The notes beneath the pieces are model-generated. The model had not been told where the DNA came from, made no database searches, and was given only the letters and a program-made list of their open reading frames with translations. A DNA stretch of 64,000 bases from the sequence record LC778249.1; one strand, given 5' to 3'. A program made the position numbers and the translations under genes. This document shows positions 8,329 to 26,332 of this stretch, in pieces (the stretch's first letter is position 1; every line of letters begins with the position of its first letter).

Positions 8329-8357
8329 AAAGAAAGGGAGCCCTCGGGCTCCCTTTT
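8329..8357. terminator. bidirectional terminator
   Basis: AAAGGGAGCC-CTCG-GGCTCCCTTT between convergent genes. Confidence 0.85.
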
Positions 8358-8359
8358 GT

Positions 8360-9185: not shown

Positions 9186-9713
9186 TTAGCCTCCGTCAAG
9201 TGGATTCAATGTGAAAACAAATTTCTTCCGTTCACGCCATGTCCCAGCAGCAGCAATCCCAATCATTTTCCATCCAAATCTAAATCTGAACTGTTTCCCA
9301 AATACACTCGGATATCTCATACTGAATTGGAAATGTCCGCATTCTTGAGTGATGAAATACCAGCCAAACTTGGCTTCGTCTCCTTTAGTATATCCAAGAG
9401 ATCCTCGCCATTTAAATTTTGGACTCTTTGGCTGATATGCAAGAACAGACCAAGCAAATCCATATGCCGGATTTCGAATTAGCCATAATACTCGTTGAAT
9501 ATAACGAGGATATCCTTGGCAACGTTCTACGTGACCGCTATCGCCATCTAGTGGAGCGTCTGGAGTTTGATACCAGCTCAACCAGTTTGGTAGCGTCTCT
9601 TTATTTATCGCAAACAAAGGAAGCACTGGTGATAAGATCCAGCACGTTAGGCACATGAATAAGTGAATAGGCAGCAAAACAATATGCTGTAGCATTCTTA
9701 AAATAACTTTCAT
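9186..9713 (-). CDS. hypothetical membrane protein
   Basis: AAGGAG SD, hydrophobic N-terminus, WLSWYQTPD.PLDGD and WLIRNPAYGF motifs. Confidence 0.7.
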   Translation of the reverse strand: MKVILRMLQHIVLLPIHLFMCLTCWILSPVLPLFAINKETLPNWLSWYQTPDAPLDGDSGHVERCQGYPRYIQRVLWLIRNPAYGFAWSVLAYQPKSPKFKWRGSLGYTKGDEAKFGWYFITQECGHFQFSMRYPSVFGKQFRFRFGWKMIGIAAAGTWRERKKFVFTLNPLDGG

Positions 9714-9725
9714 TTTATCTCCTTT

Positions 9726-9750
9726 AAAAATAAAAGGGGCCGAAGCCCCT
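9726..9750 (-). terminator. intrinsic terminator
   Basis: Minus strand GGGGC-TTCG-GCCCC followed by a T tract. Confidence 0.8.
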
Positions 9751-9761
9751 TAGTTTATTAT

Positions 9762-12700
9762 TTAGTTAACGGTTCTCAGATTATATCCGACAACTTTTCG
9801 AACTCTACCATTTTCCCAAGCGGTAACGAATGTCCGGTTATCAGCAGAGAATCTTCCGCCCCAACCTAATCCACCTGAACCACCAGAAATATCGTAGTTC
9901 CAACCAATTGCTTGTAGATATTCTAGATCATATCTAGTGAATGTTTTCGGACTAACTAATCCCATATCATCCCAGCCAACAACAAACATTATCATGTCAA
10001 AGTCTGTCCATGGACGAGTTAATGCGAAGTTTCCTCCACCAACATCTCCATCAAATATCGTGACTGCGCTAGTAGCTCTGATATTATTGTGTGTGTGCGT
10101 GTTTGACGGCGGCGGGTTATTTACAGAATATACGCGGTCACCAGAATCATATACTCCAGTTCCTCCGTATACTCCACCCGGAGATCTAAAGTTACCACTG
10201 ATATCAAAAGTATAAATTCCCATTGTTCCTTTAGTACCACTTTCACCGGAACCAACCCGAATAATACCTTGACCCCAAACGTTGCCAGAACGCAATACTC
10301 CAAGTTCAACGTCAGTTGTATATCCAACACCCGAAACAACGGAACGTCCCTTCACGATTTGATAATAATCAGACGAACCAGCCACGGCTCCAAAATCAAT
10401 TTGAATAGGAGCTTCTCTTGCCCATTGATCTGCATATGCGTGTGAACCACCGGCTGCCCAGTTAGTTCCATACATAGTCAATCCGGTTCCCTCTGCTCGC
10501 ATTTGCATGTATCGTTTCGCTTCACCAAATGAACCATTCGACTGACCAAAGTTCAAATCGCCTGTTGTATTATCAAGCCATACAATACGAGCGTGTTTTC
10601 CAGGAACATGAAATTCTAATACTGGATTACCGCCTGTGTTAATCTGGAATTGACCATTACCATACACATATGTTGGTCTACGCAATAGTATTTTACTAGC
10701 TTCAAATACAGCGATTGGGTTAGTTTCACTGGGAGCAACGCCATCGGAAATAGCAAGTCCTTCAAATCCTTTTCCGGTTTGTCTGTTAATATGGAACCAA
10801 GCGTTTGATGTATTATTGATAAACAAAGCACTCGCGCCCTCGCCGAATGTAGCAGCGCCGGATTGTCCATCTTTCATCAACATCTGATTGTTAGCGTTGA
10901 TTTGAATACCTGCGTTGGCATTCCAAGGAGCAGCACCAACTCCAAGATAAATGAAATCAATTTCTCCGGTTGGCTTTCCGTGGAATCCAAATGCCGCTTT
11001 TCTTGAACCATCGGTCTCAATAGCAGTAAATCCTCTTGCCCAATCAGTTGATACTCCAGATAATGGAGTAAAGAAATATTCGGAAGTGGAATTAGTTCCT
11101 CCGACTTCATATCCATGTGTTGCCAGTACCCTTCTATTAGGCAAAAATTCTAATGCTCTATAAGTAGCATCGACGCTAATATAAGGAATCTTAGATGTAC
11201 CGGAATCAATTTCCAATGCCAACTTCTTGGAGTTCTTGTCTACCATGATATAATCATTCGAGACAAACGCTTTGGTGTTGTTTAATGCACCAGTCATTGA
11301 ATCGCCGGCTTTCGCAACGTTCTTCGCGTCTACTGCGTCAACATATGCCTTATTAACTAGATGTCCAGCAGCCGTTCCCTGTTTGCCCAGTGTAATAGTA
11401 CCATCATTCGCGATAATAGTTTCAACTGTTGTTGTTCCTATGCCTTGAGGACGCAAATGGATTGTTCCTGTTGCACCAGCTCCGCCACCGATAATAGTTC
11501 TACCGTCTGCACCAACAAACATACCTTGAGTGCTATTAGTCGAACGAACGAAACCATAATCACCAGAAGATCTGAATGCAGTTGCTACAACTGGTCCAGT
11601 TGCGTTAATAGATCCATCACCAAGGAAAGAAACAAGAGCGTTTTGTCCTTCGTTGCCGTGACTCAAAGTAAGAGAGTTTGATTCTGATGCCAAATGGAAT
11701 CTTGTATCTGCCGCATCTTGGAAACTAATACTACCTTTATCATTCACCATAATTGAGTTTTTGATTTTAGCAGCAGTCAGTGTTCCTGTCATAGCATCAC
11801 CAGCGCGAGACACTAGATTTAAATCATCATTTGTCGGTAGATTATGAAGACTAAGAATCTCTTCTCTGACACTAATGTCGGTAACTGTCAATCCGGTTGC
11901 GTCTGGAATAAGTATCGGATGTGCTCCATATCTAAGTCCATCAACTACAACATGTGCCATACTAATTGCGGAACGATACAGCGCAATATATTCAACGCCG
12001 TTGTATGTATGATATACCAGTTTTGTGCCAGATGTTTTTGCGCCGGATAGATAATGGATCCTTGCATACTGTTCGGTATATCCGCTATATACTGCAACTT
12101 CTGCATAATCACTTTGCAAATTAGAGGTAGTAGCACCGCGATTGAAAATAATTTTTCCTATAAATCCATTTTTCTCAATAGGAGTAGAACTAGAACGCTT
12201 CGCAAGAAGAATTAGAGAAGGTTTAGCATCCGCTGTATTTCCTAATGCTTTTACAGTATGAACGACGGATGTTGCCGCTACTTCGATTCCGTTTCCTACT
12301 ACTAGATCTTGATTCACTTTTAGTTTATCGACGTCTCCGCCACGTTCATCGATTTGTTTTACCCAAGGTGTCCAAGCCATTGTACCATCATTTCTAGTTC
12401 TGATGTATGTGGAGCCTTGTGTTCTATCTGTCGCGATTTGAGTCACGAAGGTATTAGCGTCTTTATCTGATCCAATAACAAACATTGTACCGTAATCCAA
12501 TGGAGGAGGATTAACTGATCCAGTTGCACGTGCCAAATACAAGTTATAAAAACCGGTTGACTCGTATTCGTCAAAGTTGATTGGACCCCTGATATTCTTA
12601 GTCTTACCTTCTAGACCAACTTTATCTTTGATAGAAGCCCATGGAATAAATCCATCTGTATCAACAAGAACACGTCCATTACCCGCATTCCATTTCATTG

Positions 12701-13757
12701 CTTGATGCAATACAACGTTTTTTGTTGTATATTCTTCGGCAGTTGTATTATATCCCAAATACAGATCACCACTGGCAGCGCCTAAAGTAACGTTGCCGTT
12801 ATTATGATCTCGCATAATAGAATATGTCTTGCTGTTATACAATGAACGCAATCCACCAACACCTTCGATGTTGATATATCCACCGTTCTTCATGTTACCA
12901 CCAGAACGGCTCAAAGCGTCGGCTGGAAGATCGTCTAGTTTAACTTTGTCTTGAGCACTCATAGAACCGGAAGCAGTTCGCGAAGCAGCCGTGATGGCCA
13001 GCGTTGGATTGACGCCTCCAGTTGTAGTCAATGGTGCAGTAGTCACAATGCCTTGGACAGCAGTACCGACTTTGGTATCGACGTATTTCTTGTTTGCTGC
13101 ATGAGTATCAGCGGTTGGCTGATCTTCCAAAACAACGGGGTCAGTAAATGTCTTTGTTCCAGCGATTGATTGAGCGCCAGTAATCTTTACATTCTGTGCA
13201 TCAAGGGTATCAATCTTGGTATTTGCGGTAGCCAGATCAGCGGTGAGTTTATCGGTAGTTGTTTCTGCGAACTGCATCGCTTTATCAACTTCACGATCTA
13301 CATAATCTTTCCGAGCTGCGTGAGACGCTGCCGATGGTGTCGTTGCAGGGATAAAAACTTGACCATCTCGGAATCCGACATAGTTAGCGTTTTTGTTTGT
13401 GTAAATTCTAACTTCGCCAACATCGTTTGTAAGAACTTGAATACCAGAACGCGGGGTTCCATCCGCTTTACGACTTGCAATAAGCCAGTGTGCACCAGCG
13501 GTGTTATCTTTATCCATGTTGAATGCTGCGTTTGGAGCTTGTCCCCATCCCACATCATTCCCGACTGCAATAACTTTTCCAGTTGTAACGATATCGCCTT
13601 TTAGATTAATACCGCCATTAATTGTCTGACCGCCTTTTGAGGTGATCACATCGAATTCTTTATAAAACAGGCTATCATCAAGAGGGTTTAGCTCAAGAAT
13701 GCCCTGGTGCCAAATCAGATTACCTCCGATTTGTGATCCTAGTTTAAGATCTGCCAT
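9762..13757 (-). CDS. distal long tail fibre B (gp36-like N-terminus, no chaperone domain)
   Basis: MADLKLGSQIGGNLIWHQG start; fibre repeats KDYVD and VSRAGD.MTG; 1331 aa. Confidence 0.85.
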   Translation of the reverse strand: MADLKLGSQIGGNLIWHQGILELNPLDDSLFYKEFDVITSKGGQTINGGINLKGDIVTTGKVIAVGNDVGWGQAPNAAFNMDKDNTAGAHWLIASRKADGTPRSGIQVLTNDVGEVRIYTNKNANYVGFRDGQVFIPATTPSAASHAARKDYVDREVDKAMQFAETTTDKLTADLATANTKIDTLDAQNVKITGAQSIAGTKTFTDPVVLEDQPTADTHAANKKYVDTKVGTAVQGIVTTAPLTTTGGVNPTLAITAASRTASGSMSAQDKVKLDDLPADALSRSGGNMKNGGYINIEGVGGLRSLYNSKTYSIMRDHNNGNVTLGAASGDLYLGYNTTAEEYTTKNVVLHQAMKWNAGNGRVLVDTDGFIPWASIKDKVGLEGKTKNIRGPINFDEYESTGFYNLYLARATGSVNPPPLDYGTMFVIGSDKDANTFVTQIATDRTQGSTYIRTRNDGTMAWTPWVKQIDERGGDVDKLKVNQDLVVGNGIEVAATSVVHTVKALGNTADAKPSLILLAKRSSSTPIEKNGFIGKIIFNRGATTSNLQSDYAEVAVYSGYTEQYARIHYLSGAKTSGTKLVYHTYNGVEYIALYRSAISMAHVVVDGLRYGAHPILIPDATGLTVTDISVREEILSLHNLPTNDDLNLVSRAGDAMTGTLTAAKIKNSIMVNDKGSISFQDAADTRFHLASESNSLTLSHGNEGQNALVSFLGDGSINATGPVVATAFRSSGDYGFVRSTNSTQGMFVGADGRTIIGGGAGATGTIHLRPQGIGTTTVETIIANDGTITLGKQGTAAGHLVNKAYVDAVDAKNVAKAGDSMTGALNNTKAFVSNDYIMVDKNSKKLALEIDSGTSKIPYISVDATYRALEFLPNRRVLATHGYEVGGTNSTSEYFFTPLSGVSTDWARGFTAIETDGSRKAAFGFHGKPTGEIDFIYLGVGAAPWNANAGIQINANNQMLMKDGQSGAATFGEGASALFINNTSNAWFHINRQTGKGFEGLAISDGVAPSETNPIAVFEASKILLRRPTYVYGNGQFQINTGGNPVLEFHVPGKHARIVWLDNTTGDLNFGQSNGSFGEAKRYMQMRAEGTGLTMYGTNWAAGGSHAYADQWAREAPIQIDFGAVAGSSDYYQIVKGRSVVSGVGYTTDVELGVLRSGNVWGQGIIRVGSGESGTKGTMGIYTFDISGNFRSPGGVYGGTGVYDSGDRVYSVNNPPPSNTHTHNNIRATSAVTIFDGDVGGGNFALTRPWTDFDMIMFVVGWDDMGLVSPKTFTRYDLEYLQAIGWNYDISGGSGGLGWGGRFSADNRTFVTAWENGRVRKVVGYNLRTVN

Positions 13758-13783
13758 TATAGACTCCTCTCAGTTTATAGCAG

Positions 13784-13790
13784 TATTTAG
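13784..13790 (-). promoter_or_regulatory. late promoter CTAAATA
   Basis: Between the terminator and the SD of fibre B. Confidence 0.6.
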
Positions 13791-13791
13791 C

Positions 13792-13813
13792 AAAAAGGCA
13801 CCCGAAGGTGCCT
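13792..13813 (-). terminator. intrinsic terminator
   Basis: AGGCACC-TTCG-GGTGCCTTTTT on the minus strand. Confidence 0.85.
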
Positions 13814-14253
13814 TAGTTTTTAAACGTCCACTGATGTCTTGATGTTGTTCCATCTGGTGAGCTAGAAAATGTAATAACAAATTCCGTCGTCGCTTGGATT
13901 GTTTTCACCATTTTAATCATTCCAGCATCCATTCTCTGCCATCCACCACGATATCCCTGTGCTTCTACTGGACCAGTCCATGTAATATTTACATATGGCA
14001 TGCCGAGAATAATTTCCTGTTTCAGATTATAAGTTGGAACTTCCATAATAACTTTTCCACCTACATATGAGAAATAAACTGGCATCGAGCTAGTTCGACT
14101 TGGTGCAGCAATTAAGCTGATTGCTGTTTTATTTACTAACTGACTCATAAATCCAGCAACAGGTAAACCCGCTTGTGTTCTCATGTTGCTAGCCCATCCG
14201 TTGGCTCTTAATTCTGTATTGGCTGTGCTAAGCCAAAACGGTAATGCTACCAT
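13813..14253 (-). CDS. 38: gp38-like fibre tip/adhesin
   Basis: N-terminus PFWLSTANTE..GW...GLPVAGFMSQL resembles T2-type gp38; follows a chaperone-bearing fibre; split SD. Confidence 0.55.
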   Translation of the reverse strand: MVALPFWLSTANTELRANGWASNMRTQAGLPVAGFMSQLVNKTAISLIAAPSRTSSMPVYFSYVGGKVIMEVPTYNLKQEIILGMPYVNITWTGPVEAQGYRGGWQRMDAGMIKMVKTIQATTEFVITFSSSPDGTTSRHQWTFKN

Positions 14254-14283
14254 AATTTAAACGGGGATTTCTCCCCGTCCTCC
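14254..14283 (-). promoter_or_regulatory. hairpin-bridged ribosome-binding site
   Basis: mRNA: GGAGG-[ACGGGGA-GAAA-TCCCCGT]-TTAAATT-ATG. Confidence 0.7.
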
Positions 14284-17200
14284 TTAGTTAAGTTTAGATT
14301 CCAAATATTTAACACGTTCGGTCAATTCTTTAATTGCTTCAATTAATAGTGCGTTAACACCAGAGTTAGAAACAGTCAAATAATCGATGTCGTTTGAAGT
14401 TACGGTACCAGTCGCTTCTGGCAATACCACTTTCAGACGTTGCGCAATAATACCAGCTTCGCGAGTTGTTTTACCAACTTTATCGTAAGTGATACCAGAT
14501 AGATAACCAACTTTGTCCAACGCATTCAGAATTGGTTTAAAATTAGATTTCAATCTTTCATCTGAACGAATATAAACATCATTGAAGTTACCATTTCCTT
14601 CTGCTTTTATACCACCTGCGGTATAAATCGCGTCGCCTTCTGCATTAGAACAATAGAACTTTTTACCGTTGTATGTTCTTACCCAAGTTGAATCTTCCAT
14701 ATGTATACCGCCATTGTAAGTAGCGTTAAACCAACCTGTGTTTCCGGTAGTTCTGATCCAGTTGCTCAAGGTCAATGTTCCATGTGTAGAACCTTCGAAC
14801 ATAACGCGAGCGCCATTAATCTGTAGTTCTTTATTCATGTAGAACACTGGACGATCTGTGTATATGTGAGCGTAACTGGTATTCTGTGCTCCAAGCTGCA
14901 TACCACCATGTTGTGTTCTCACCCATAGACTATCGCCTTGATTTTCCAATCTAACGTTATAATCGGCAGTGCTATTTGTATCGTGGAAATCAATATACTT
15001 AGCGACTTCCATTACACCATCGCTTCCAATATATGGAATACTATTAATGGTACCTGCCCAAGAACCAGTTTGACTCAAATTAACATCTTCGCTGTTAATT
15101 GATCTTCTCCATCCGGGTGCATACGTCGGTCCGTGATTAGTATAAATGTACTCTCGACTAGCTACCGCTCCCAATGCTGTTCCAGTTGTTGTTGGAGTAG
15201 TAACACGAATGGTATATTGTGATGTTCCACCAATAACTTCGATAACACATCCTGCCAGATGGATATTACCAAATCCCGTATCTGTGATTACGTTGTTTCC
15301 AGCATAATCCCAAGATACTTTACTAACCCAATAAACTGTCTTGAACGCACCTTTTTCTGTCAACATTTGAACAAATCTAGCGGTCGTGATTCCTGTTTCG
15401 CCGGAGGTCTTACCGGTTGCTTTATCCGCGAAAACTGTTATATGTCCAGTTACGTTTACGTTTCCTTTTGCAACTATGTCTCCACCCGCAATAACATCAT
15501 CGCCAGCATATACTGTACCTTCTACATCAATGTAAGCATTCAATGTTGTGCTTGGGTTATCATTGGATTTTTTAAAGTGCCATCCAAATGGTGGTCTAAT
15601 ATTATCGTGTACGTTTGGTGTAATTTCTATATTCTGACCACCCATATGACGATATTTAATTGATGGATACTTTGTCGCATCATCGGTAATATTTTCCAGA
15701 ATAATGTTTGCATTATCAGCTTTCAAATGAATTGATTTGTTAGTCTCGATAACACCACTCTTATGAATCTTTAACCCATTTATCCATGGTGTTGCGCCTT
15801 CTCCCAAGTAAGTAAATTTGAATTCTCCGTTCTCGGAAAACGCGCCTACACCCCAGTCACGAGTTGTGCCTGTTGATTCATATCCACTTATACCACGAGC
15901 GTTAGTTCCGGTTGGATTGGGTGTCCCAATCAACGTAATTAAATCGCTACCTTGTGTTGATGGATCTACAAAAAATCTACCGTTGGATCTCGTTTCGTTT
16001 CTTTTTATTAAAAACACATCTTCCGATGTAGTAGAACCCGTAGGTTTAACTCTAAACTTGAAATATTCGTTTCCGTTATCTCCAGTTTCGAACCACATAT
16101 AACTATCAGTATCTTGGTCTGAATCGTTTTTAAATCCAATCTTAGCCCAATCGGTGTTTCTGCTCCAGACAAGTTGACTATCATTTGTGAAAGTCAAACT
16201 ACCAGTCATTGAATCGCCAGTCTTATTCACAGCAGCAGCAGGAAGTCCATTCAACTTAGCTTTATCAGCAGCAGACATTGCGCCATCTTCTGTTGTTGTT
16301 GCATTTACCAAGCTGATTACTGGATTAATACCTCCAGTGCTCTTGACTGCACCAGTTGCTGTTACGCTTTGAACTGCGGTACCTACTTTAGTATCTACGT
16401 AATCCTTTGTTGTTAAAGAACTTGGAAGATTACCCATTTCGCCAGTACAAGGCTTGTATAATGTCAATTTATCTTCATGTGGAAAGTATTGCCAAATACC
16501 CTTTCCGCCGGTAGTGTCTTCATTTAATCTAATACCTTTGCCATCAGCAATCATGATGTATTTTTTATCATTTTGATCGCTCTCTGTAAAAATAATTTGC
16601 GGGTATGGCATACTTATTTCCAGAGCGCCAGTCATTTTATCACCAGCTCTACTAACCAAGTTTAGATCTACGTTCGATGGCTTTTGCATTGACGTATAAA
16701 CGCGAGCAACATCAATCTCTGTTTTATCTTCGATTGGTAAAGTGGCTACGGTATTCATATGAACAGTAAGACCCCAATCATTCAAAATGGTAATTGTCAT
16801 TTCACCACTATAAGTTGGTCTTTGTACCCATAATTCAACTTCCGTTCCAACTGTAATTGCATAGAATTTACATTCAGAGATACCTTCTTGTAAAAGTGTA
16901 ATTCTAATCATGTGTTCCGGATGAACACCTGTACCAGAGTAAGTTTGTGTGTTGAATGAAATATTATACATTGGAACGGAGTTATTTCCAAAATTATTTC
17001 CACCAGTCAACAAGAAATTAGCTCCGTTGCCACTTGATCCAATCGCCGCTTTCATTGAACACAATCTGGTATAACTAATTGCTGTTCCGGTTGCCGAACT
17101 TTTGATTCGCTGTGGTGCGCCAACATCATTATGATTTGGTTTATTCCACTCGCCGTATGTGCTCTTATTGTTGAACTTTAAATCACCATCAAGTGCCCAC

Positions 17201-18498
17201 AACAAATCGTATTCTGCGTTTGTTGTTGCGCTATCATTTTTGCCAGTCTTTGGCCAAGCAATACCTTCCGACGTAGTATCAGATGGGTCACCGAATACTA
17301 ACTGATTAATACCACCGATTGAACCGTTGTTCAGTTTGATACTGTATTTTCCGAATCCCATGGTATCTGCTACTTTCATATTCAGAGCACCTACCATTTC
17401 ATCGCCAGCGCGTGAAACAAGATTCAATTCGACGTTAGTTGGCTTATCATCCTCGTGATAGATTCTTGAACTTTTTAGCCAATCGCTGCGTCCGTGTTTA
17501 AACCAAAGTTTATTTTCGTCAACGTCACTTCTAGCACCGGCAAATAATGACCAAGCAGCATAAGAAGCTGTCCATCCATTTACGGTGAATCCAGATACCC
17601 AACTAGAGCTAACATCACTTTTATTGGTGAAGTAAGCCGAAATTGTCTTATCTGCTAGGCCGCTTGGAGGAATCATTGCCGCACGTTCGTCTTTGACTCT
17701 AATCCAGTTCTTTTCGTCTACCTCGGATTTTGTATAAGCATCCAAGTCGCCTGGTGTTGGTTTATTTCCTGGGTGATAAACCATGTTGTCGCCAACATAC
17801 AGCGGTGTGTTTGAAATGTTTTTCATTGTTCTGACATCGAAACCAGATGTTCTATTTCCAACACCAGCACCAGCGGCTCTTATTTCTAGTAAATCTCCAC
17901 CCTTAGCTTGATCATATGCACCAAGCTTAAAAAATGTGGAATTACCAGCGGCGTCCCATCCTGATGTAATACTAGCAATTTCATTAACTCTTATCTTTCT
18001 AGCGACCGAGTTAAAAAGCAAATCCCCGGTCATTGTATCGCCGGCTTTTGCAACATTCTTTGCATCAATAGCGTCCGCGTAATCCTTACGCACTAAGCTA
18101 TTAGCTGCACTTGATTGAGCTGCGTTTGTTAACACAGGATATTGAAATAATGCACCGGTGGTTGCCAATTGCATCATCAATGCTGAATCTGTGTTTCCTG
18201 TTGAAATTTTATATACGGAACCCTGCACGGTTTCGTGCCAAATAATATCAGCTTCGCCGCCTCTAAATTTTCGTAGATAACTCTTAGAGTTTGTTGGCTG
18301 TGACGGCATACTAATCAAATCATAGTTAGTTCCACCGATATCGAAATTGGTGGTCCCTAATAAAGTTTGATTACCTCTTGTTGTCATTATCTCCTGATCG
18401 CGATAAAACAGCTTATCGTCAACCGGATTTAATTCCAGAATCCCTTGGTGCCAGATTAGATTTCCACCAATCTGAGACCCTAATTTAAGATCTGCCAT
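14284..18498 (-). CDS. 37: distal long tail fibre A (gp36/37 fusion with C-terminal intramolecular chaperone)
   Basis: gp36-like start; C-terminal SDERLK..EAGIIAQ..ALLIEAIKEL (peptidase S74 type); 1404 aa. Confidence 0.88.
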   Translation of the reverse strand: MADLKLGSQIGGNLIWHQGILELNPVDDKLFYRDQEIMTTRGNQTLLGTTNFDIGGTNYDLISMPSQPTNSKSYLRKFRGGEADIIWHETVQGSVYKISTGNTDSALMMQLATTGALFQYPVLTNAAQSSAANSLVRKDYADAIDAKNVAKAGDTMTGDLLFNSVARKIRVNEIASITSGWDAAGNSTFFKLGAYDQAKGGDLLEIRAAGAGVGNRTSGFDVRTMKNISNTPLYVGDNMVYHPGNKPTPGDLDAYTKSEVDEKNWIRVKDERAAMIPPSGLADKTISAYFTNKSDVSSSWVSGFTVNGWTASYAAWSLFAGARSDVDENKLWFKHGRSDWLKSSRIYHEDDKPTNVELNLVSRAGDEMVGALNMKVADTMGFGKYSIKLNNGSIGGINQLVFGDPSDTTSEGIAWPKTGKNDSATTNAEYDLLWALDGDLKFNNKSTYGEWNKPNHNDVGAPQRIKSSATGTAISYTRLCSMKAAIGSSGNGANFLLTGGNNFGNNSVPMYNISFNTQTYSGTGVHPEHMIRITLLQEGISECKFYAITVGTEVELWVQRPTYSGEMTITILNDWGLTVHMNTVATLPIEDKTEIDVARVYTSMQKPSNVDLNLVSRAGDKMTGALEISMPYPQIIFTESDQNDKKYIMIADGKGIRLNEDTTGGKGIWQYFPHEDKLTLYKPCTGEMGNLPSSLTTKDYVDTKVGTAVQSVTATGAVKSTGGINPVISLVNATTTEDGAMSAADKAKLNGLPAAAVNKTGDSMTGSLTFTNDSQLVWSRNTDWAKIGFKNDSDQDTDSYMWFETGDNGNEYFKFRVKPTGSTTSEDVFLIKRNETRSNGRFFVDPSTQGSDLITLIGTPNPTGTNARGISGYESTGTTRDWGVGAFSENGEFKFTYLGEGATPWINGLKIHKSGVIETNKSIHLKADNANIILENITDDATKYPSIKYRHMGGQNIEITPNVHDNIRPPFGWHFKKSNDNPSTTLNAYIDVEGTVYAGDDVIAGGDIVAKGNVNVTGHITVFADKATGKTSGETGITTARFVQMLTEKGAFKTVYWVSKVSWDYAGNNVITDTGFGNIHLAGCVIEVIGGTSQYTIRVTTPTTTGTALGAVASREYIYTNHGPTYAPGWRRSINSEDVNLSQTGSWAGTINSIPYIGSDGVMEVAKYIDFHDTNSTADYNVRLENQGDSLWVRTQHGGMQLGAQNTSYAHIYTDRPVFYMNKELQINGARVMFEGSTHGTLTLSNWIRTTGNTGWFNATYNGGIHMEDSTWVRTYNGKKFYCSNAEGDAIYTAGGIKAEGNGNFNDVYIRSDERLKSNFKPILNALDKVGYLSGITYDKVGKTTREAGIIAQRLKVVLPEATGTVTSNDIDYLTVSNSGVNALLIEAIKELTERVKYLESKLN

Positions 18499-18523
18499 TT
18501 CTAATCCTCATGTTAGTTTTCAT

Positions 18524-18531
18524 TATTTATG
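18524..18531 (-). promoter_or_regulatory. late promoter CATAAATA
   Basis: Between the gene 35 terminator and the fibre A SD. Confidence 0.6.
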
Positions 18532-18541
18532 AGATTGGAAT

Positions 18542-18592
18542 AAAAAAAAAGCCCCAACCGAAGTTGGGGCAAAAACCGTAATTGTTACGGTT
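18542..18592 (-). terminator. terminator preceded by a second hairpin
   Basis: GCCCCAAC-TTCG-GTTGGGGC plus T tract; upstream AACCGTAA/TTACGGTT hairpin. Confidence 0.85.
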
Positions 18593-18613
18593 AAGGGTAC
18601 CGGGTAGGTACGA

Positions 18614-21600
18614 TTAGATTGCCACCCACGGTTTCGCATCTGCTAAAGCTAGTTGCGATCCTGCTCCACGGGGACGGAAAATAACTTTCTTGTTAGTGTT
18701 CAATCCACTGAACCAAGAAGTGACAACAGCGTTTTCTGGAATTCCATATCCAGTTGCGTTGATTGCCTGAATTGCAGTAAACGTTCCGATATACTGCTCG
18801 TTATTATTATCGTCGATTTGATACAGCTCAACATCGATTGCGTTATATGGTCTTTTATCGCCAACAAAGTGCAAGTAAGCACTATAACCACTTGTATTTA
18901 TAGTAGTAAAAAGATCCATTTGAACACTGTCGATATAATGTGAGTCTTTCATTCTGCCAATCTGATTTTCTTCGCCTTTAGTTATATCCCATCCATAGAT
19001 CTTGTTTGTTGCGTCAATCTCACCAATTCTAATATATTTGATTGCGCCCAACTCGTTTTCTATGAAAGTGTCAACTGGTTTAACGGTTGAATATTGTGAT
19101 AGATCATAACGACGGCTATTGCACAACTTAGTGCTACTGTCAATCAACTCAACAAGCGTGATATCATTGTTGAATCTATATCCTCCAGCCCTTGCGCCGA
19201 TCAGATTTATACTTTCTGTGCCATCTGGATTCCAAGCTCCGGTAGCAGTTTTTCCATTTACTGTTATCGTGATTGTGTTACCAACAACACGCACAAATAT
19301 ATCAAGCTCGTCACCCACTTTAGCGCCAGCGTCGATTGTTATTCCTGTATTGAGCTGCTTGGCCGCATTATAGGAGAACACACGAACTGAGCTAACACTT
19401 CGATATTGGTCAACGCAAATCGTGCTGGTATCATAGACCGGCCCGCTCAAAATAGGATTGATATCGTCTTTTAGAGCACCAGCTTTACACTTAACACGAA
19501 TTGCCCAATCTTTCGGATCTGGCTTCCAAGCGTTTTGAATATGAAGATATCCAGTTCTGTAATCAGGAATCCATTTAGTTCGATTCACAGTTTTCATGAT
19601 CGGAGTCTCTCGATCTTCTAGTTTATATTCACTTCCACTAGAATTCTCGATAATAACGTCGGTGTAAACTCTGGAGACGTTTAGCTTATGAATCTTGACT
19701 ATCTCATTGAGCTTAGGTGCAATCGTTCTTATATAGACGCCAGGAGCTTCGTCCGTGATTTTATAAGCAACTGACCCTTTGCATCTTCCAGCTGGAAGAG
19801 ATTTGATCAATGGCGCACTACCACTTTGTGCCGGTGAATATCTCAACTCAATTCGAGTTTCTCCTTCGATGTCAAAATCAATTCGAACAATAGAACCCTT
19901 TGGTGCACTAAATTTCAGAGTGCCTCCACTAGGAGTCGTTGCGGTATTGAACTTATAGGACTTTTCATTTTGTCTAACGGCAGTGCTAAACAAACTCAGA
20001 TCTGAAACGTAAGTTTTACTTGCGATTACATCTGCTTTTGCCAGTTCGTCCTTGACATAGTTGTTATAGGCATCATATCGACTCATGTTATAATTTTTGT
20101 AATAACGATCATCTTTACCCTTTCCATCAAGTGAGAAGTCCCAGATATATCCATCGAAAAACTCGGTGTTATTATATCTTGCACCAACCCGAACAACTCT
20201 ACTACCTGATTTGATATATCCACTAAGAACGTAATCTGTATTTGCAAGAACTTGCATCCCGGCAGTAAATGGAGTTCCGTTTACAGTAGAAATCACATAA
20301 TTTCCGTATGCAGTTAATATTCCAGATGTTGTAATGTAAATTCCACCAAACTGATTGATAGTTTCAGTTAATGTTCTACCTTCAAGAATATATCCTTTAC
20401 CAGAACGAGAATTGAATTTGATTTGAAACTCACCGGGACCATTCCAAGGCTGAATATCTGAATATTGATCTACGCCATTCAATGGAGCGATTTGCTTATT
20501 AATATCAATCCAATCAACGTTAGTCACTTTGCCGTTAATCTTAGGACTAATAACACACTCAATCTTAAACTTCATTGTGTTAACGTTTTTACCGTCGGCT
20601 TCTACTATCCATGCTCCATTATTAACATCAAGTGGATTTCTGATAGAATATTGACTTGAGCTTTGTACCCAATCTGCTCTTGGACTAGCGATCTCACGAA
20701 CAACGCAAGAATATCGTTTATTGAGTTCCAATCCAGGAAGCAATGTGTTTCCGCCAGCGTCTAAAATCGTCACGAACACATCTTTACTTTCATCGCATAG
20801 ACCACCGGGAACAAGTTTAGATCCAGGTCCACAATAAAGAGCATTTGCACTATTATCAGGAGAAACGTTGGTAGCGAAATATTCTTTGCCGCTATAGCGT
20901 GATTTGCCAGGAACTGTTCGTTTATCATCTAGTTGACCGGGTCTAACGAAATTATAAAAGCGATCATTTGTTCCATTCAGGCGAGTTTTGTCAATCATGT
21001 TTAGTTCATGGACAGATCCGCGGAGTTTATGCATATAAACGTTTCCTCGCTTATCTGCTCCGACTGCAAAATGAGTTATTTGTTTAAACGGAGCTGTAGC
21101 GATTCCAGATTTAACTTCTACACCATCCAGATAGAACTTAACATTTGAGCCGTCTACCTCAATCTTATATGTGTATGATTTACCATATTCGATTCTAGCA
21201 TCAAAATCGTATCCAAATCCTCCATAACTAAAGAAGTGTCCTTCTCCTCTATCATGATGAACTGTTCTAATACCAACTTTTAGATTTCTATTCTCCGTTC
21301 CGTCGGTAGTTCCACCCATACCAGAACGCATCCACGTATCGGTAATATCTGGATAGTCATAAGAGATAGTTTGACTAACTTCGAATTTAGAACCCGGAAT
21401 CCAGTCTGGTATATCGAAATATCCAGTTTGATCGAATTGTGGCAACCATTCTTGATCTAGTTCTTCGTATGATTGAGATACTAGATCGCCTACCTTAGAA
21501 CTAGCAACGAAAGACGCTTCCGCATCGCCTTCATTGGCGGTAGAAGTAATAAAGCCCCATTGTCCAACTGTTCCATGTGATCTAGACTTATTAACTTCCG

Positions 21601-22531: not shown

Positions 22532-22541
22532 TTGGCCTCCG

Positions 22542-25500
22542 TTAACTAATCCAAATAAAATCAACAGATCTGGTTACTGCGTTAGGTCTAATTTCCAAGA
22601 ACTCACCGTTACCGACTTCAATTCTCAGACGCTTAACTGTTAGCAGTTCCTTGATTGTCACATCACCATTTGCAGTAATAGCTTGTGGGGATGTAATAAT
22701 CAATTCGCCAGTCATGTTGTCACCTTTCTTATTTACACGACTATCGGCAGACTTAGTAACATCATCAATCAAGTTATCGACGTAATCCTTGCGGGTTAAA
22801 TCGTTAGCTGCGACCGGTGCGGTTGCTTTAGTTCTAACTTGACTGGATGCCTCAACAATACCATCAGGATGGAATCGTGTCTGGTTTGTTGGGTCTGTAT
22901 ACCCATTCGGTCTAATGTTCAATGCGATTTTGTTTGAACCGATGTTAAGAGCACCATCAGTTCCAGCATACAAACCAGTTAATGCAATTGCACCGCCAAC
23001 TTTAATACTGAACGCATTGCCGTTACCAGCACTGAATGTTGTATCATTCTGGAATGTTTTCAATCCGGTAATAGTCTCAGTGACGTTTCCAGTCTTGCGA
23101 ACATAACGATCTTCGTTATATCTCCAACGTGCCAAATGATTATCAGCGGTAGGATCTTGTCCACCGTTTGAAACGTTTCTATAGAACTGAACATCGCCTG
23201 TTCTGAAAATACTCATTTTCGCGTCGAATACATCATCGGTAATAGTGCTGACCTGATAAGCACCGTCAATAACATGAACGCCGTTTGCCCACCAATTTTT
23301 ATTGGTGCTGTTTCTGAACATAATTGCGGTATCTTGTTTGCCACCAGTTGCAATCATATCAAGTCTAACAACGCTTGCACGTTCAATAACTGGAGATTCG
23401 GTAAACTTCATACCACCGGTAATAGTCTGTGCAACTGTACGACGAATCCAATCATCGGCTTTAACTCTTGTGCCGTCTGCTGTATCCATAGAACGTGAAC
23501 TTTCGGCAACACCTAGAAGGGGCAAATAATGAGCTAATGCGGTATTCAGTGCTCGTGGACTAACAACGATATTATCCGTTGCATATTGACCAACTGGGCG
23601 AGTTGATCCTTGAATATCATCACCTTGCCACACTGTATTCGCGCTTGCATCATTTGCCAGAACACACATCATACCAACGCCATAACGAGATTCATTCATT
23701 CTGTGGTTCGCGCTTGTGCGCATAGAATCAAGAACACGAATTGGAGTCATTGCGCGAGTTGCATCTGTGCCAGCGTCGGATTCTGCCTTAGTCGCGATCT
23801 CAATAATACCAGTCAGGGTTTCACTTGCTTTTCTGTCGTTCAATTTCTTAGGCGTAATCATCACGTTATCAAGCGGATTAATCATTGTGTTTGTTTCTGC
23901 TTGTGTTGCAGTACGCAATGTTCCGCGTTGTGTTTCGGTTGATTCTACGATATTAAAACTCTGTCCTGCCCAGATTGAACCAGCAGTGGTTAAACCGCTT
24001 GACACATCAACTGTTAACCGTGTACCATTCAACCATACTCCGAATGTTTTTGGAGTTACAAACCAACGATCATGCAAAGTGCCAGCATCGACTTCTGCCT
24101 GTGTTGCCGTTTCTGCTAGACCCCAGCGGGTTTCGTTTGCAGTACGCTTAACAATCGCATCCGGTGTAACATGAATGTTATCGCCAGTTGGAGGAGTATT
24201 TGAACTCATTTCCGCATCGGTAACAGCTCTTGACAAACCGGTTAGTGCTGTCGTAGCTTGACGTCCTTGCAGAGTCTTAGCAGTAACGAGCAACGGACCA
24301 TTAACATGGTTATCTGTGCCAGCGTCAGTTTCTGGTTGAGTAGCGACGAATCCCATACCTTGAGAAGTTTCGGTAGCGACCTTCTCGAACAAAACTTTTG
24401 GTGTTACATAACGGTAATGCTCGTCGAAATCATGAACACCTACACCTTTAGTACCACGCTCTGCTTGTTTTGCGCCAGCCTGAATAACTTGGTAAGTAAT
24501 ACCGGTTTGTGTCTCGGTTGACTTGCGACCATCCAGCACTTTTGGAGTGATTGCAGTCTGTGCCCACATTTCACCGGTGCCACTCATTGCGTTAGCTTGT
24601 GCTTGTGTTGCTACAGTCAAAACACCACGCATGGTCTCAGTTGCCAATCTGTTGTTGACTCTTTCCGGAGTCATGATTACACTGTTCCAAGCTTCGGTTG
24701 TACCGCTTGTTGCTTTTGATTCAGCATCAGTTGCCAATCGAGCGATACCACGGTTAGTCTGTGTGGCGACTTTGTTACTCAGGGTTTCTGGTGTTACAAA
24801 TGCTTCGCAATCACGATTTTGACCAGTTGTAATTTGCTCTTTGTTTTTGTTTACTTCTACTTGTGTAGCGATTGCCGCTAGACCAACAAATGATGTATCA
24901 TTGCGATCAACTCTGAATGGCATTGGTGTGTTGGAGATCAAAACCCAAACATCAAGACCAGTTCCCAGTGCATTTCGGAAGTAAGTGAATTCCCATTGAT
25001 GGGAACGACCGTCGATTGTGAAAGTCTCTGTCTTTGTTGTAAACTTAGTCAGGTCTTTAACAATGTCGCGATACTTACTAACATATGGAGTACCAAGTGC
25101 ATTTTCGTCTGGAACGATATAATCGTTAGCTTGTGCGTCCGGGATCTTGACTGTGATCTTAGAACCTTGTACCATATAACTTGTATCGATGATAAAGCTA
25201 TCGCCGTTGGATGCTTCTTGAGGAAACGTTACGGTGATTGTATCTGTTGCATTTGCAGCGTGTACCGCTAGTTTTTCACCAAGAATAGCTGTATAATTGG
25301 ATTCAATCATGTTCCAACGAGCTTTGGTGTCTGCATCAAAAACGCGCCACTGGTTAATTCTCGCGTCAAACACGAAATAACCCCAACCGGTGCTATCAAA
25401 CTTGGCACTGTCAACTGGTGTTTCGCCTACGCCAACTAGAATCTTATGGTTACTGTTTGGGTAAACGAAAAACTCAGTTTTAGTAAGTGGATTCAATCTA

Positions 25501-26255
25501 TCCAAATCGTATGTTACAATGGTATCGCCATGGTTTGCATAACGAGGAAGACGAATACGAATGCCACCGCCGTATTGAGTTTCGCGGACAAGATGATCGC
25601 CAACCTTAGCACGGAAGAAGTTTTCACCGGGAATATAGCTTGACGAACTAACATAAGTTCGATTAGAATCTCCCTGTGCCCACAACTGAGCAACCCACTC
25701 GGTACCATTGTAAATGAATACAGTGGTAGATCCAGATAGTGTGATGCGATGTGTTGCCTGATTGTTGATTTTTTTGCCGTTGCCGTTTACTACGATTTCA
25801 TAATCGTGGGTAGCGAATCCGTTGTCTTTGATAACTACGGTATCGCCCGCTGCTGGAATATTGTTTGCAGCATCGAACGGCATAGTGTATACTGAGTTTG
25901 CGCCTACAATCTGAGATAGAATGTATTCACCTTGACGAACGTTACCCTGCAAGTTAGCAGTCGATGTAACTACTCGCCATGATGGGTCAACGCGAGTCGC
26001 TTTCCATTTGTTAAGATTGAAAGGCTCCGGTGCTGTAATTTCGACTTCGCTAATATAGATGCGGTCGTTATATGTTACAGCAAAGTCCTTTGGATATGTT
26101 CTGCTTGGGCTATGTGGCTGAATGGTGTTTTCGTAGGTGAAGAAATCAACGTTAACGCCGTCCCCGCCTTTAGTTTTATCAGGGTAGCCGAAGTTAATAG
26201 CGCGATGTCCGGCAGCATCCAATCCTGCCGTAGCGCGTAGCGGTTGTAAAGCCAT
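22542..26255 (-). CDS. 34: proximal long tail fibre gp34
   Basis: LRATAGLDAAG..IN start; repeats GIARLAT.AE and ATQAE. Confidence 0.93.
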   Translation of the reverse strand: MALQPLRATAGLDAAGHRAINFGYPDKTKGGDGVNVDFFTYENTIQPHSPSRTYPKDFAVTYNDRIYISEVEITAPEPFNLNKWKATRVDPSWRVVTSTANLQGNVRQGEYILSQIVGANSVYTMPFDAANNIPAAGDTVVIKDNGFATHDYEIVVNGNGKKINNQATHRITLSGSTTVFIYNGTEWVAQLWAQGDSNRTYVSSSSYIPGENFFRAKVGDHLVRETQYGGGIRIRLPRYANHGDTIVTYDLDRLNPLTKTEFFVYPNSNHKILVGVGETPVDSAKFDSTGWGYFVFDARINQWRVFDADTKARWNMIESNYTAILGEKLAVHAANATDTITVTFPQEASNGDSFIIDTSYMVQGSKITVKIPDAQANDYIVPDENALGTPYVSKYRDIVKDLTKFTTKTETFTIDGRSHQWEFTYFRNALGTGLDVWVLISNTPMPFRVDRNDTSFVGLAAIATQVEVNKNKEQITTGQNRDCEAFVTPETLSNKVATQTNRGIARLATDAESKATSGTTEAWNSVIMTPERVNNRLATETMRGVLTVATQAQANAMSGTGEMWAQTAITPKVLDGRKSTETQTGITYQVIQAGAKQAERGTKGVGVHDFDEHYRYVTPKVLFEKVATETSQGMGFVATQPETDAGTDNHVNGPLLVTAKTLQGRQATTALTGLSRAVTDAEMSSNTPPTGDNIHVTPDAIVKRTANETRWGLAETATQAEVDAGTLHDRWFVTPKTFGVWLNGTRLTVDVSSGLTTAGSIWAGQSFNIVESTETQRGTLRTATQAETNTMINPLDNVMITPKKLNDRKASETLTGIIEIATKAESDAGTDATRAMTPIRVLDSMRTSANHRMNESRYGVGMMCVLANDASANTVWQGDDIQGSTRPVGQYATDNIVVSPRALNTALAHYLPLLGVAESSRSMDTADGTRVKADDWIRRTVAQTITGGMKFTESPVIERASVVRLDMIATGGKQDTAIMFRNSTNKNWWANGVHVIDGAYQVSTITDDVFDAKMSIFRTGDVQFYRNVSNGGQDPTADNHLARWRYNEDRYVRKTGNVTETITGLKTFQNDTTFSAGNGNAFSIKVGGAIALTGLYAGTDGALNIGSNKIALNIRPNGYTDPTNQTRFHPDGIVEASSQVRTKATAPVAANDLTRKDYVDNLIDDVTKSADSRVNKKGDNMTGELIITSPQAITANGDVTIKELLTVKRLRIEVGNGEFLEIRPNAVTRSVDFIWIS

Positions 26256-26285
26256 TGCGTACCTCTTTTGTGTATGTTATGCTGT

Positions 26286-26292
26286 TATTTAG
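26286..26292 (-). promoter_or_regulatory. late promoter CTAAATA for gene 34
   Basis: About 30 nt upstream of the 34 start. Confidence 0.6.
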
Positions 26293-26332
26293 AACTTAAC
26301 CCCGTCGAAGTTCAGACGATTAGAGGAGTCCC

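What the first reader, a model, noticed from the sequence alone, without database searches (positions are those of the whole stretch)
9762..18498. Two alternative gp36-headed distal fibres, each its own transcription unit
Seen: both genes start MADLKLGSQIGGNLIWHQGILELNP with many synonymous differences. A ends in an auto-cleaving chaperone and has a gp38-like partner; B ends in an unrelated tip. Each has an upstream terminator and late promoter. Established: T4 has one gp36 and one gp37. Inference: both dock on the same gp35 knee, giving mixed or heterogeneous virions with two receptor specificities and no invertase.
Basis: partly seen in the sequence, partly recalled or inferred. Interest (0 to 1): 0.75.

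Follow-up and report, generated by a model that had tools for sequence, protein, structure and literature searches.

The report
Two alternative distal tail fibre genes
This T4-like Aeromonas phage carries two complete, separately transcribed distal long-tail-fibre genes with the same knee-docking head but different receptor-binding ends; this arrangement was already noted in its relative Aeh1 in 2011, and its function is still untested.

Summary
The window is Aeromonas phage phiWae14, 100% identical to LC778249. All genes are on the minus strand, in the order gp34, a giant gp35, fibre A, small ORF S, fibre B, then a lysis cassette.

- **Shared head:** A and B share an identical 25-residue head, although 16 of those 25 codons differ synonymously. 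The first 160-173 residues of each align to T4 gp36.
- **Size:** Each protein is about as long as T4 gp36 plus gp37, so each is a whole distal half-fibre.
- **Transcription:** Each gene has its own terminator hairpin and an Aeh1-type late promoter. These are conserved in six relatives, with compensatory changes in the stems.
- **Fibre A:** It ends in a Peptidase_S74 chaperone. S follows in the gene-38 slot with the same split ribosome-binding hairpin as T4 gene 38, but S matches no gp38 family.
- **Fibre B:** It ends in a small globular tip whose nearest fold is the T7 gp17 tip.
- **No switch:** There are no inverted repeats, so no invertible segment.

The arrangement occurs in all ten Aeh1-like phages and, apparently independently, in Cronobacter S13-like phages. 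Trojet et al. (2011) described it as a gene 37 duplication of unclear function. Mixed virions are the best reading but remain unproven.

The parts
22542..26255 (-). gp34-like proximal half-fibre (1237 aa)
   Evidence: phrog_972 over the full length. T4 gp34 residues 8-913 align at 33%, E 2e-129.
26286..26292 (-). Late promoter motif CTAAATA ahead of the gp34-like gene
   Evidence: Lies 31 nt before the ATG. This is the Aeh1 late promoter consensus in PMC1524935.
18614..22531 (-). Giant gp35-like knee protein (1305 aa): a gp35 module of about 360 aa plus a C-terminal extension of about 945 aa
   Evidence: phrog_1154 and phrog_11229. T4 gp35 residues 142-372 align to residues 138-358. Weak ILEI and Laminin_G_3 hits. 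No internal repeat of the gp35 module.
18551..18570 (-). Terminator hairpin plus a run of nine T between gp35 and fibre A
   Evidence: Folding energy -20.8 kcal/mol, z-score -4.1. Compensatory stem changes in relatives.
18524..18530 (-). Late-promoter-like ATAAATA ahead of fibre A
   Evidence: Lies 26 nt before the ATG. The same position holds CTAAATA in Aeh1, avDM12 and Ah1, and TATAAATA in AsFcp_2.
14284..18498 (-). Fibre A: a gp36-gp37 fusion-type distal half-fibre (1404 aa)
   Evidence: phrog_19567 over the full length. Mosaic and hypervariable between sister phages.
18019..18498 (-). gp36-like head of A (residues 1-160)
   Evidence: T4 gp36 residues 1-186 align at 31%, E 2e-14. Residues 1-39 hit the start of gene 36 in about 1340 phage records.
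16003..16236 (-). Segment like phage Mu tail fibre protein S (A residues 755-832)
   Evidence: PDB 5yvq, E 5e-28.
15010..15402 (-). Segment like Mu S/S' (A residues 1033-1163)
   Evidence: PDB 8ju3, E 2e-28.
14608..14781 (-). Segment like the PilV shufflon constant region (A residues 1240-1297)
   Evidence: Pfam Shufflon_N, E 1.6e-7, above the cut-off.
14287..14565 (-). C-terminal intramolecular chaperone of A (residues 1312-1404)
   Evidence: Pfam Peptidase_S74. Matches the C-terminus of S16 gp37, PDB 6f45. Conserved Ser/Lys string.
14261..14285 (-). Split ribosome-binding site of S: the Shine-Dalgarno sequence overlaps the stop codon of A, then a hairpin, then the ATG
   Evidence: Fold -15 kcal/mol, z-score -2.9, and the same layout as the T4 gene 37-38 junction. 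Conserved in six phages.
13813..14253 (-). Small ORF S (146 aa): fibre accessory in the gene-38 slot. It has a conserved, disordered N-terminal part of about 50 aa and a variable beta-sandwich.
   Evidence: phrog_11523 over the full length. Homologues always lie directly after fibres that end in an S74 domain. Family alignment. Model.
13795..13814 (-). Terminator hairpin after S and before B
   Evidence: z-score -3.4. Four compensatory stem variants in relatives.
13784..13790 (-). Late promoter CTAAATA ahead of fibre B
   Evidence: Lies 27 nt before the ATG. Present in all six phages.
9762..13757 (-). Fibre B: the second gp36-gp37 fusion-type distal half-fibre (1331 aa)
   Evidence: phrog_26758 over the full length. 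99.85% identical to phiAS5 B.
13239..13757 (-). gp36-like head of B (residues 1-173)
   Evidence: T4 gp36 residues 1-188 align at 29%, E 6e-13..
10173..10424 (-). B residues about 1112-1195: a shaft segment that precedes an S74 chaperone in coliphage gp37 and in Aeromonas prophage fibres
9765..10079 (-). Globular tip of B (residues about 1227-1331), with no chaperone domain
   Evidence: AlphaFold2 pLDDT 59-89. The best Foldseek hits are the T7 gp17 tip and staphylococcal phage receptor-binding proteins.
9734..9751 (-). Terminator-like hairpin after B

Best explanation
A and B are two complete, alternative distal half-fibres of the long tail fibre. Each one fuses the roles of T4 gp36 (knee-docking head) and gp37 (shaft and receptor-binding end).

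What is shown:
- Both are intact and each is about the size of T4 gp36 plus gp37.
- Both begin with a gp36-homologous head whose first 25 residues are invariant in both paralogues.
- Each has its own terminator-bounded late transcription unit.

What is inferred from the T4 assembly pathway: each trimer picks up a gp35 monomer through its head and then joins a gp34 proximal half-fibre. The six fibre positions of a particle would then be filled by A or B in proportion to supply. This gives particles with two receptor specificities without any DNA switch.

Fibre A matures like T2- or S16-type gp37. Its C-terminal S74 chaperone is cut off, and the small protein S then docks by its conserved N-terminal peptide at or near the new end. 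The nearest analogue for S is a gp38-type cap, and a chaperone role is less likely. Fibre B folds without such a domain and ends in its own globular tip.

A is the fast-swapping cassette and B the steadier one.
For: Identity and homology of the heads:
- Head identity with saturated synonymous divergence.
- Head homology to T4 gp36 over 160-173 residues, and to the start of gene 36 in about 1340-1380 phage records.
- Residues 1-25 are identical in both paralogues of five of the six phages; the A copy of AsFcp_2 has two substitutions. Residues 26-40 are paralogue-specific and largely conserved across three genera, so the paralogues are old and both are under purifying selection.

Size and conservation:
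- Mature A is 1311 aa and B is 1331 aa, against 1247 aa for T4 gp36 plus gp37.
- The order A-S-B is present in all ten Aeh1-like phages seen.

Transcription:
- Separate late promoters and terminators with compensatory stem changes.
- No inverted repeats.

T4 precedent:
- gp35 binds gp36, and at least three fibres are needed for infection (PMC3004832).
- The knee joins the gp34 and gp36 trimers (bioRxiv 10.64898/2026.03.06.709160).

Cassette behaviour:
- phiWae14 and phiAS5 are 98-100% identical in gp35, S, B and DUF7338. Their A proteins are only 64.5% identical over residues 1-917 and unrelated over 918-1301.
- B tips also swap, together with their own maturation device: a Tfa-like gene in PX29 and an S74 domain in Ahp1_CNU.

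Protein S:
- Its homologues always follow fibres that end in an S74 domain.
- It has a conserved N-terminal peptide and a hypervariable C-terminal domain.
- Its types assort independently of the tip types of A.
- Its translation start has the T4 gene-38 layout.
Against: - No virion proteomics, imaging or transcript data exist for any clade member in the literature searched.
- T4 gp35 is a monomer joined to a single distal rod in the T4 literature. Shared docking by two fibres is therefore an analogy, not an observation.
- Residues 26-170 differ between A and B and could steer them to different partners.
- In phiWae14 and phiAS5 the promoter of A lacks the C that Nolan et al. call a strong determinant.
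- The Ah1 record annotates B as two overlapping CDS, an apparent single frameshift. If that is real, B can be lost.
- S is nearly identical in phiWae14 and phiAS5 although their A tips differ. This speaks against S being the main specificity element.
Confidence: 0.5

Rival explanations
1. Only one fibre is built into the long tail fibre in appreciable amount. The other copy is a weakly used spare or a recombination reservoir of fibre modules.
For: Trojet et al. name this option. The promoter of A departs from the clade consensus in this phage. B is annotated in two pieces in the Ah1 record.
Against: Both ORFs are intact in nine of the ten phages seen. The heads are under strong purifying selection in both copies. 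Both have Shine-Dalgarno sequences, late promoter motifs and terminators conserved with compensatory changes.
Confidence: 0.17
2. The fibre is branched. The giant gp35 holds A and B at the same time, so every long tail fibre carries two distal rods.
For: gp35 here is 1305 aa against 372 aa in T4. The extra 945 aa form a C-terminal extension of unknown role.
Against: The extension contains no second copy of the gp35 module. The same giant gp35 occurs in CC2- and 65-like phages, where the searches found only one gp36 head. Cronobacter S13 has two heads with a 501-aa gp35. Trojet et al. state that fibre size indicates a single gp37 trimer.
Confidence: 0.12
3. One of the two attaches somewhere other than the knee, for example as an extra baseplate or side fibre.
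For: Residues 26-170 are paralogue-specific. Some records annotate these genes as gp12-like short fibres.
Against: Both heads align to nearly the whole of T4 gp36 and share an invariant first 25 residues. Both genes lie in the gene 36-37 slot between gene 35 and the lysis genes.
Confidence: 0.1
4. A and B form mixed trimers within a single fibre.
For: The heads are identical. [quoted passage not shown]
Against: Beyond residue 52 the two share only scattered short fibre motifs in different positions. Only A carries the C-terminal chaperone that drives trimer folding.
Confidence: 0.02

Closest known systems
Tandem gene 37 duplication of Aeromonas phage Aeh1 (Trojet et al. 2011, PMC3157838)
   Same: It is the same locus. 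Aeh1 has orthologues of A, S, B and the downstream small ORF in the same order. A is 63-65% identical and B 73% identical to the phiWae14 proteins.
   Different: phiWae14 is a different phage, closest to phiAS5, with its own A cassette. The paper left the function open. It also treated the ORF after B as a possible partner; here that ORF looks like a lysis gene.
Dual distal subunits of Cronobacter phage S13 / LPCS28 and of RB43 (RB43 as reported in the paper)
   Same: Two gp36-headed distal fibre genes lie in tandem after gene 35.
   Different: In S13 both fibres end in S74 domains. A true gp38 adhesin (Pfam GP38 and Gp38_N) follows only the second, and gp35 is 501 aa. The heads are only about 50-58% identical to those here, so this is probably an independent duplication.
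T2 / T6 / S16-type distal fibre: gp37 with a cleaved C-terminus, capped by the gp38 adhesin
   Same: Fibre A ends in an S74-type chaperone that matches the C-terminus of S16 gp37 (PDB 6f45). A small co-transcribed gene follows it in the gene-38 slot with the same split Shine-Dalgarno hairpin as T4 gene 38.
   Different: S has no GP38 or Gp38_N Pfam match, no BLAST match to T4 gp38 and no PDB fold match. It has no glycine-rich motifs. gp36 is fused to the fibre rather than being a separate protein.
Mu G-segment and P1 C-segment tail fibre switching (S/S' with U/U'), and the R64 shufflon
   Same: Two alternative receptor-binding ends are encoded in one genome. Fibre A carries Mu S/S'-like and PilV-like segments.
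   Different: There are no inverted repeats and no invertible segment, and none of the annotated neighbouring genes is a recombinase. Two full genes are expressed side by side instead of one gene with a switchable end.
Phages with several receptor-binding proteins on one particle (K1-5, CBA120, phi92; named from my own knowledge, not tested here)
   Same: The concept of more than one specificity per virion without a genetic switch.
   Different: Those phages use branched adaptor complexes at the baseplate. Here the two proteins would compete for, or share, the knee of a T4-type long tail fibre.

Membership tests
T4 gp36 (distal hinge connector) | N-terminal sequence homologous to gp36 | tested here: met
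   T4 gp36 residues 1-186 and 1-188 align to A 1-160 and B 1-173 (E 2e-14 and 6e-13). tblastn of the heads lands on the start of gene 36 in T4, T2, RB51 and others.
T4 gp36 (distal hinge connector) | Pfam Phage_T4_gp36 (PF03903) domain | tested here: not met
   No PF03903 hit on A or B. The only hit, weak and below the cut-off, is in the C-terminus of the gp34-like protein. S13 fibre 2 hits it strongly and serves as a positive control.
T4 gp36 (distal hinge connector) | Separate protein of about 220 aa that binds the N-terminus of gp37 | tested here: not met
   The head is fused to a shaft of about 1150 aa in both genes. There is no free gp36 gene in the locus.
T4-type gp37 | Sequence homology to T4 gp37 | tested here: not met
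   No BLAST alignment for A. For B there is only a weak alignment confined to its N-terminal head (E 6e-4).
Peptidase S74 intramolecular chaperone | Pfam PF13884 above the gathering score at the C-terminus | tested here: met
   A residues 1312-1362, 41.4 bits against a cut-off of 22. B has none.
Peptidase S74 intramolecular chaperone | Conserved serine and lysine at the start of the domain | tested here: met
   A Ser-Asp-x-Arg-x-Lys string lies at the first profile position in A of all six phages.
Peptidase S74 intramolecular chaperone | Self-cleavage and release of the domain | not testable with these tools
   This needs peptide mapping of virion protein.
gp38 adhesin (T2 / S16 type) | Pfam GP38 (PF05268) and Gp38_N (PF21721) | tested here: not met
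   S has no Pfam, NCBIfam or PDB sequence hit. S13 gp38 scores E 5e-77 as a positive control. There is no fold match to any PDB entry at E <= 0.001.
gp38 (any type) | Gene directly after the distal fibre gene, co-transcribed, with a split Shine-Dalgarno hairpin at its start | tested here: met
   (side-by-side fold with the T4 gene 37-38 junction). The terminator lies only after S.
Tail fibre assembly protein (Caudo_TAP; Mu U / lambda Tfa) | Pfam PF02413 | tested here: not met
   No hit for S. The extra gene after B in PX29 gives a weak hit (E 0.0018).
Invertible tail fibre switch (Mu G, P1 C, shufflon) | Inverted repeats flanking the alternative ends, with an adjacent recombinase | tested here: not met
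   There are no inverted repeats of 25 nt or more in 8000-27000. Both genes lie on the same strand. None of the annotated neighbouring genes is a recombinase.
T7 gp17-type fibre tip | Fold similarity of the C-terminal domain | tested here: inconclusive
   The top Foldseek hits are 4a0u and 4a0t (probability 1.00, E 4e-4). The TM-score is only 0.30-0.36 because more than half of the model has low confidence (mean pLDDT 54).

The most novel reading that the evidence does not exclude
Every burst yields particles whose six long tail fibres are a random mix of two full-length distal half-fibres that compete through one invariant 25-residue head. This would be a bet-hedging host-recognition scheme in a T4-type phage with no DNA switch.

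In addition, S would found a new class of tip cap for fibres that end in an S74 chaperone. That class would be unrelated to gp38 and Tfa but would sit in the gene-38 slot.

With equal supply, and with the T4 rule of at least three working fibres, about 66% of particles would have enough of either given type and about 31% enough of both. This arithmetic is an inference.
Probability: 0.4. Interest if true: 0.65.

Novelty: new member of a known kind. Interest (0 to 1): 0.45.

Why it matters
Long tail fibres set the host range of T4-type phages. The textbook fibre has one distal half. A clade that keeps two full distal halves with one shared docking head, over three genera and ten isolates, probably uses both.

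If so, it shows how a lytic myovirus can carry two receptor specificities without an invertase. It would also show how whole fibre cassettes are exchanged behind a fixed adaptor. The question has been open since 2011 and is directly answerable by looking at natural particles.

The S family and the giant knee protein are further uncharacterised parts of the same machine.

Tried and rejected
- **Giant gp35 as a two-socket knee.** The extension has no internal repeat of the gp35 module. The giant form also occurs in phages where only one head was found, and S13 has two heads with a small gp35. No support.
- **S as a gp38 or Tfa homologue.** No Pfam, NCBIfam, PDB sequence or PDB fold match.
- **S as a chaperone specific for the tip of A.** Types of the S C-domain and tip types of A assort independently in six phages. 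Made less likely.
- **The DUF7338 ORF after B as B's partner**, as implied in Trojet et al. In PX29 a Tfa-like gene is inserted before it. In Ahp1_CNU it is missing although B is present. It sits in the holin position of T4 next to the lysozyme and an Rz-like gene. Rejected.
- **Gene conversion keeping the heads alike.** Synonymous sites are saturated, and paralogue-specific residues are largely conserved across genera. Rejected.
- **Literature searches** for virion proteomics or imaging of this clade, and for phiWae14, found nothing usable. The phiAS5 paper is not held.
- **PDB sequence searches** for B and for gp35 gave nothing useful.
- **The viral-contig scan** added only one further two-headed metagenome contig.
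- **One mistyped frame** was corrected.


Full report
**Identity of the window.** The region 9762-18498 is 100% identical to Aeromonas phage phiWae14 (LC778249.1, 225.8 kb, sewage, Tokyo). Nearly every gene in that record, including all of the tail-fibre locus, is annotated 'hypothetical protein'. The nearest relatives are phiAS5 (Chrysonvirus), Aeh1 and Ah1 (Cinqassovirus), and PX29 and AsFcp (Angelvirus). All are T4-like Straboviridae of Aeromonas.

**Layout of the locus.** Everything is on the minus strand:
- gp34-like proximal fibre, 22542-26255.
- A 1305-aa gp35-like knee protein, 18614-22531.
- Fibre A, 14284-18498.
- Small ORF S, 13813-14253.
- Fibre B, 9762-13757.
- A DUF7338 ORF, 9186-9713.
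- T4 e-type lysozyme, 8688-9185.
- An Rz-like ORF, 8360-8707.

The T4 locus fetched for comparison runs rnh, 34, 35, 36, 37, 38, t, asiA. A-S-B therefore fills the slot of genes 36-37-38.

A and B share their first 25 residues exactly and 36 of the first 52. Sixteen of the 25 identical codons differ synonymously. The expectation is 13.7 +/- 2.2 if codons were drawn independently from late-gene usage. The longest exact DNA run is 15 nt. The heads are therefore old paralogues held by selection on the protein, not by recent gene conversion.
- In six phages of three genera, residues 1-25 are identical in both paralogues in five; the A copy of AsFcp_2 has two substitutions.
- Residues 26-40 are paralogue-specific and largely conserved within each paralogue.

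**'gp36-headed' is correct.** The heads hit the very start of gene 36 ('hinge connector of long tail fiber distal connector') in about 1340-1380 phage records, including T4 and T2. T4 gp36 residues 1-186 and 1-188 align to A 1-160 and B 1-173 (E 2e-14 and 6e-13). T4 gp37 does not align to A. It aligns only weakly to B, within B's N-terminal head. Mature A (1311 aa) and B (1331 aa) each match the summed length of T4 gp36 and gp37 (1247 aa). Each is thus a whole distal half-fibre.

**Transcription units.** Nolan et al. found that Aeh1 late promoters read CTAAATA rather than the T4 motif (PMC1524935).
- The window holds six copies of CTAAATA. Four are intergenic, on the minus strand, and 26-46 nt ahead of a start codon: the gp34-like gene, B, DUF7338 and one gene near 62.1 kb.
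- A has ATAAATA at the same distance. At that position Aeh1, avDM12 and Ah1 have CTAAATA, and AsFcp_2 has TATAAATA.
- Strong hairpins followed by T-runs precede both promoters. Their stems vary between phages by compensatory changes.
- gp35 has no promoter of its own. The gp34 stop lies 10 nt before the annotated gp35 start.
- There are no inverted repeats of 25 nt or more in 8000-27000.

**Fibre A is a mosaic**:
- gp36-like head.
- Two segments closely similar to phage Mu tail fibre S/S' (PDB 5yvq and 8ju3, E about 1e-28).
- A segment like the PilV shufflon constant region.
- A Peptidase_S74 chaperone that also matches the C-terminus of S16 gp37 (PDB 6f45).

A is the fast-changing gene. phiWae14 and phiAS5 are 98-100% identical in gp35, S, B and DUF7338. 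Their A proteins are 64.5% identical over residues 1-917 and unrelated over 918-1301.

**ORF S.** The record starts S at an internal methionine, giving 123 aa. The 146-aa form matches phrog_11523 end to end and is conserved in six phages. Its most conserved part is exactly the 23 residues that the record omits.
- *Translation start.* The Shine-Dalgarno sequence overlaps the stop codon of A. An 18-nt hairpin follows, then the ATG. The T4 gene 37-38 junction, read from the fetched T4 record, has the same layout.
- *Context.* S homologues are few: 21 representatives among 1.84 billion proteins. Wherever the context could be read they directly follow a fibre gene that ends in an S74 domain. This holds for the T4-like 60AhydR15PP with a single fibre and a normal 380-aa gp35, for phiA008, and for the T5-like TS3.
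- *Architecture.* The family has a conserved N-terminal part of about 50 residues. It is disordered in the monomer model. The C-terminal beta-sandwich is hypervariable, with pLDDT about 87.
- *No family match.* It has no Pfam, NCBIfam, PDB sequence or PDB fold match. S13 gp38 scored E 5e-77 on the gp38 models as a positive control.
- *Assortment.* The two S types in the clade assort independently of the tip types of A. This argues against a tip-matched folding chaperone. It fits a module that docks on a conserved element near the cleavage site.
- *Reading.* I read S as an analogue of the T2/S16 gp38 cap, not a member of that family. A general chaperone role remains possible.

**Fibre B.** Residues about 1112-1195 resemble the shaft segment that precedes the S74 domain in many coliphage gp37 proteins and in Aeromonas prophage fibres. 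In B that domain is replaced by a globular end of about 105 aa. This end is shared only with phiAS5, avDM12, Ah1, AsFcp and two metagenome proteins.
- The model is moderately confident there. Its best fold matches are the T7 gp17 tip and staphylococcal phage receptor-binding proteins. I treat this as a lead only.
- B tips also swap. Aeh1 has another end. PX29 has another end plus a Tfa-like gene. Ahp1_CNU has an S74 domain.

**Distribution.** Two heads per genome were found in all ten Aeh1-like phages. They were also found in Cronobacter S13 and LPCS28, in Citrobacter Ci1 and in one metagenome contig. Every other record listed had a single head, and the totals allow only about 20 two-headed records among roughly 1340-1380.

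**Prior knowledge.** Trojet et al. 2011 already reported that Aeh1 and RB43 have gene 37 duplications, each followed by a small ORF. They noted that fibre size points to one gp37 trimer. They also wrote that the fibre may be a random mixture or may use one expressed copy. I found no later virion data.

**Mechanism.** In T4, gp36 binds gp37 and then a gp35 monomer binds gp36. The finished distal half then joins gp34, and at least three fibres are needed for infection (PMC3004832). A 2026 preprint models gp34 trimer, gp35 and gp36 trimer at the knee.
- By analogy, both A and B trimers would each take a gp35 and then compete for gp34 half-fibres. This would give mixed particles. It is an inference.
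- The giant gp35 does not by itself argue for two sockets.

**Verdict.** This is a further member of the Aeh1-type dual distal fibre arrangement. Three points are added here: the evolutionary evidence for a shared adaptor head, the anatomy of the transcription units, and a first description of the S family.

**Breaks seen in relatives' records.** These are counts only. In Ah1, B is annotated as two overlapping CDS (one apparent frameshift), and the gp35 match comes in two pieces. In PX29, gp35 is not annotated and its match comes in two pieces. All could be sequencing errors. Nothing in the window is broken.

Noticed in passing
window 18614-22531 (-): The knee protein gp35 is 1305 aa against 372 aa in T4. 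It is a full gp35 module (about 1-360, with a weak ILEI hit as in the T4 kneecap) plus a C-terminal extension of about 945 aa. The extension has only a weak Laminin_G_3/ConA-like hit and no PDB sequence match. It occurs in 35 Aeromonas phage records, including CC2- and 65-like phages. Its function is unknown.
   Followed up: partly
window 13813-14285 (-): The record starts ORF S 23 codons too late and cuts off the most conserved part of the family. The true start uses a Shine-Dalgarno sequence that overlaps the stop of A and is brought near the ATG by a hairpin. The T4 gene 37-38 junction has the same layout.
   Followed up: yes
window 8360-9766 (-): DUF7338 (175 aa, hydrophobic N-terminal stretch) sits where T4 has the holin gene t. 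The e lysozyme and an Rz-like ORF follow it, which looks like a lysis cassette. Its CTAAATA motif overlaps the stop codon of B and lies upstream of the terminator-like hairpin, an odd order that is conserved in six phages. DUF7338 is absent from Ahp1_CNU-2021.
   Followed up: partly
window 14608-16236 (-): Fibre A of this T4-like Aeromonas phage carries segments closely similar to coliphage Mu tail fibre S/S' (PDB matches at E about 1e-28). It also has a segment that passes the Pfam cut-off for the PilV shufflon constant region. This points to module exchange between very different mobile elements. A lipopolysaccharide-type receptor is my guess from what Mu S and PilV are reported to bind; this is from memory and was not tested.
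   Followed up: partly
window 22668-22862 (-), gp34-like residues about 1132-1196: The C-terminal part of the gp34-like protein is 57% identical over 65 aa to T4 gp36 residues 133-195. It carries the only, weak, Pfam Phage_T4_gp36 hit in the locus. T4 gp34 aligns only up to residue 913.
   Followed up: no
window 14284-18498 versus L002 14023-17964: phiWae14 and phiAS5 are near-identical around the locus (98-100% at protein level). Fibre A has been replaced almost from behind the head to the chaperone domain. This is a clean natural cassette swap between sister phages from Japan and Korea.
   Followed up: yes
L005 (Ah1) and L012 (PX29): In the Ah1 record, B is annotated as two overlapping CDS (one apparent frameshift), and gp35 is shorter, with its match in two pieces. 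In the PX29 record, gp35 is not annotated and its match is in two pieces. It is unclear whether these are real or sequencing errors.
   Followed up: no
L012 13860-14285 (PX29): PX29 has an extra 141-aa gene between B and DUF7338. It is annotated as similar to a tail fibre assembly protein and gives a weak Caudo_TAP hit. B tips therefore travel with their own maturation device.
   Followed up: partly
L019 (IMGVR_UViG_3300033696_000004), heads at 3870 and 8336: A 120-kb metagenome viral contig also has two gp36-type heads about 4.5 kb apart. It may be a further lineage with dual distal fibres.
   Followed up: no
window about 62113-62119 (-): A further intergenic CTAAATA lies 26 nt ahead of a minus-strand gene. 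It is presumably another late promoter.
   Followed up: no
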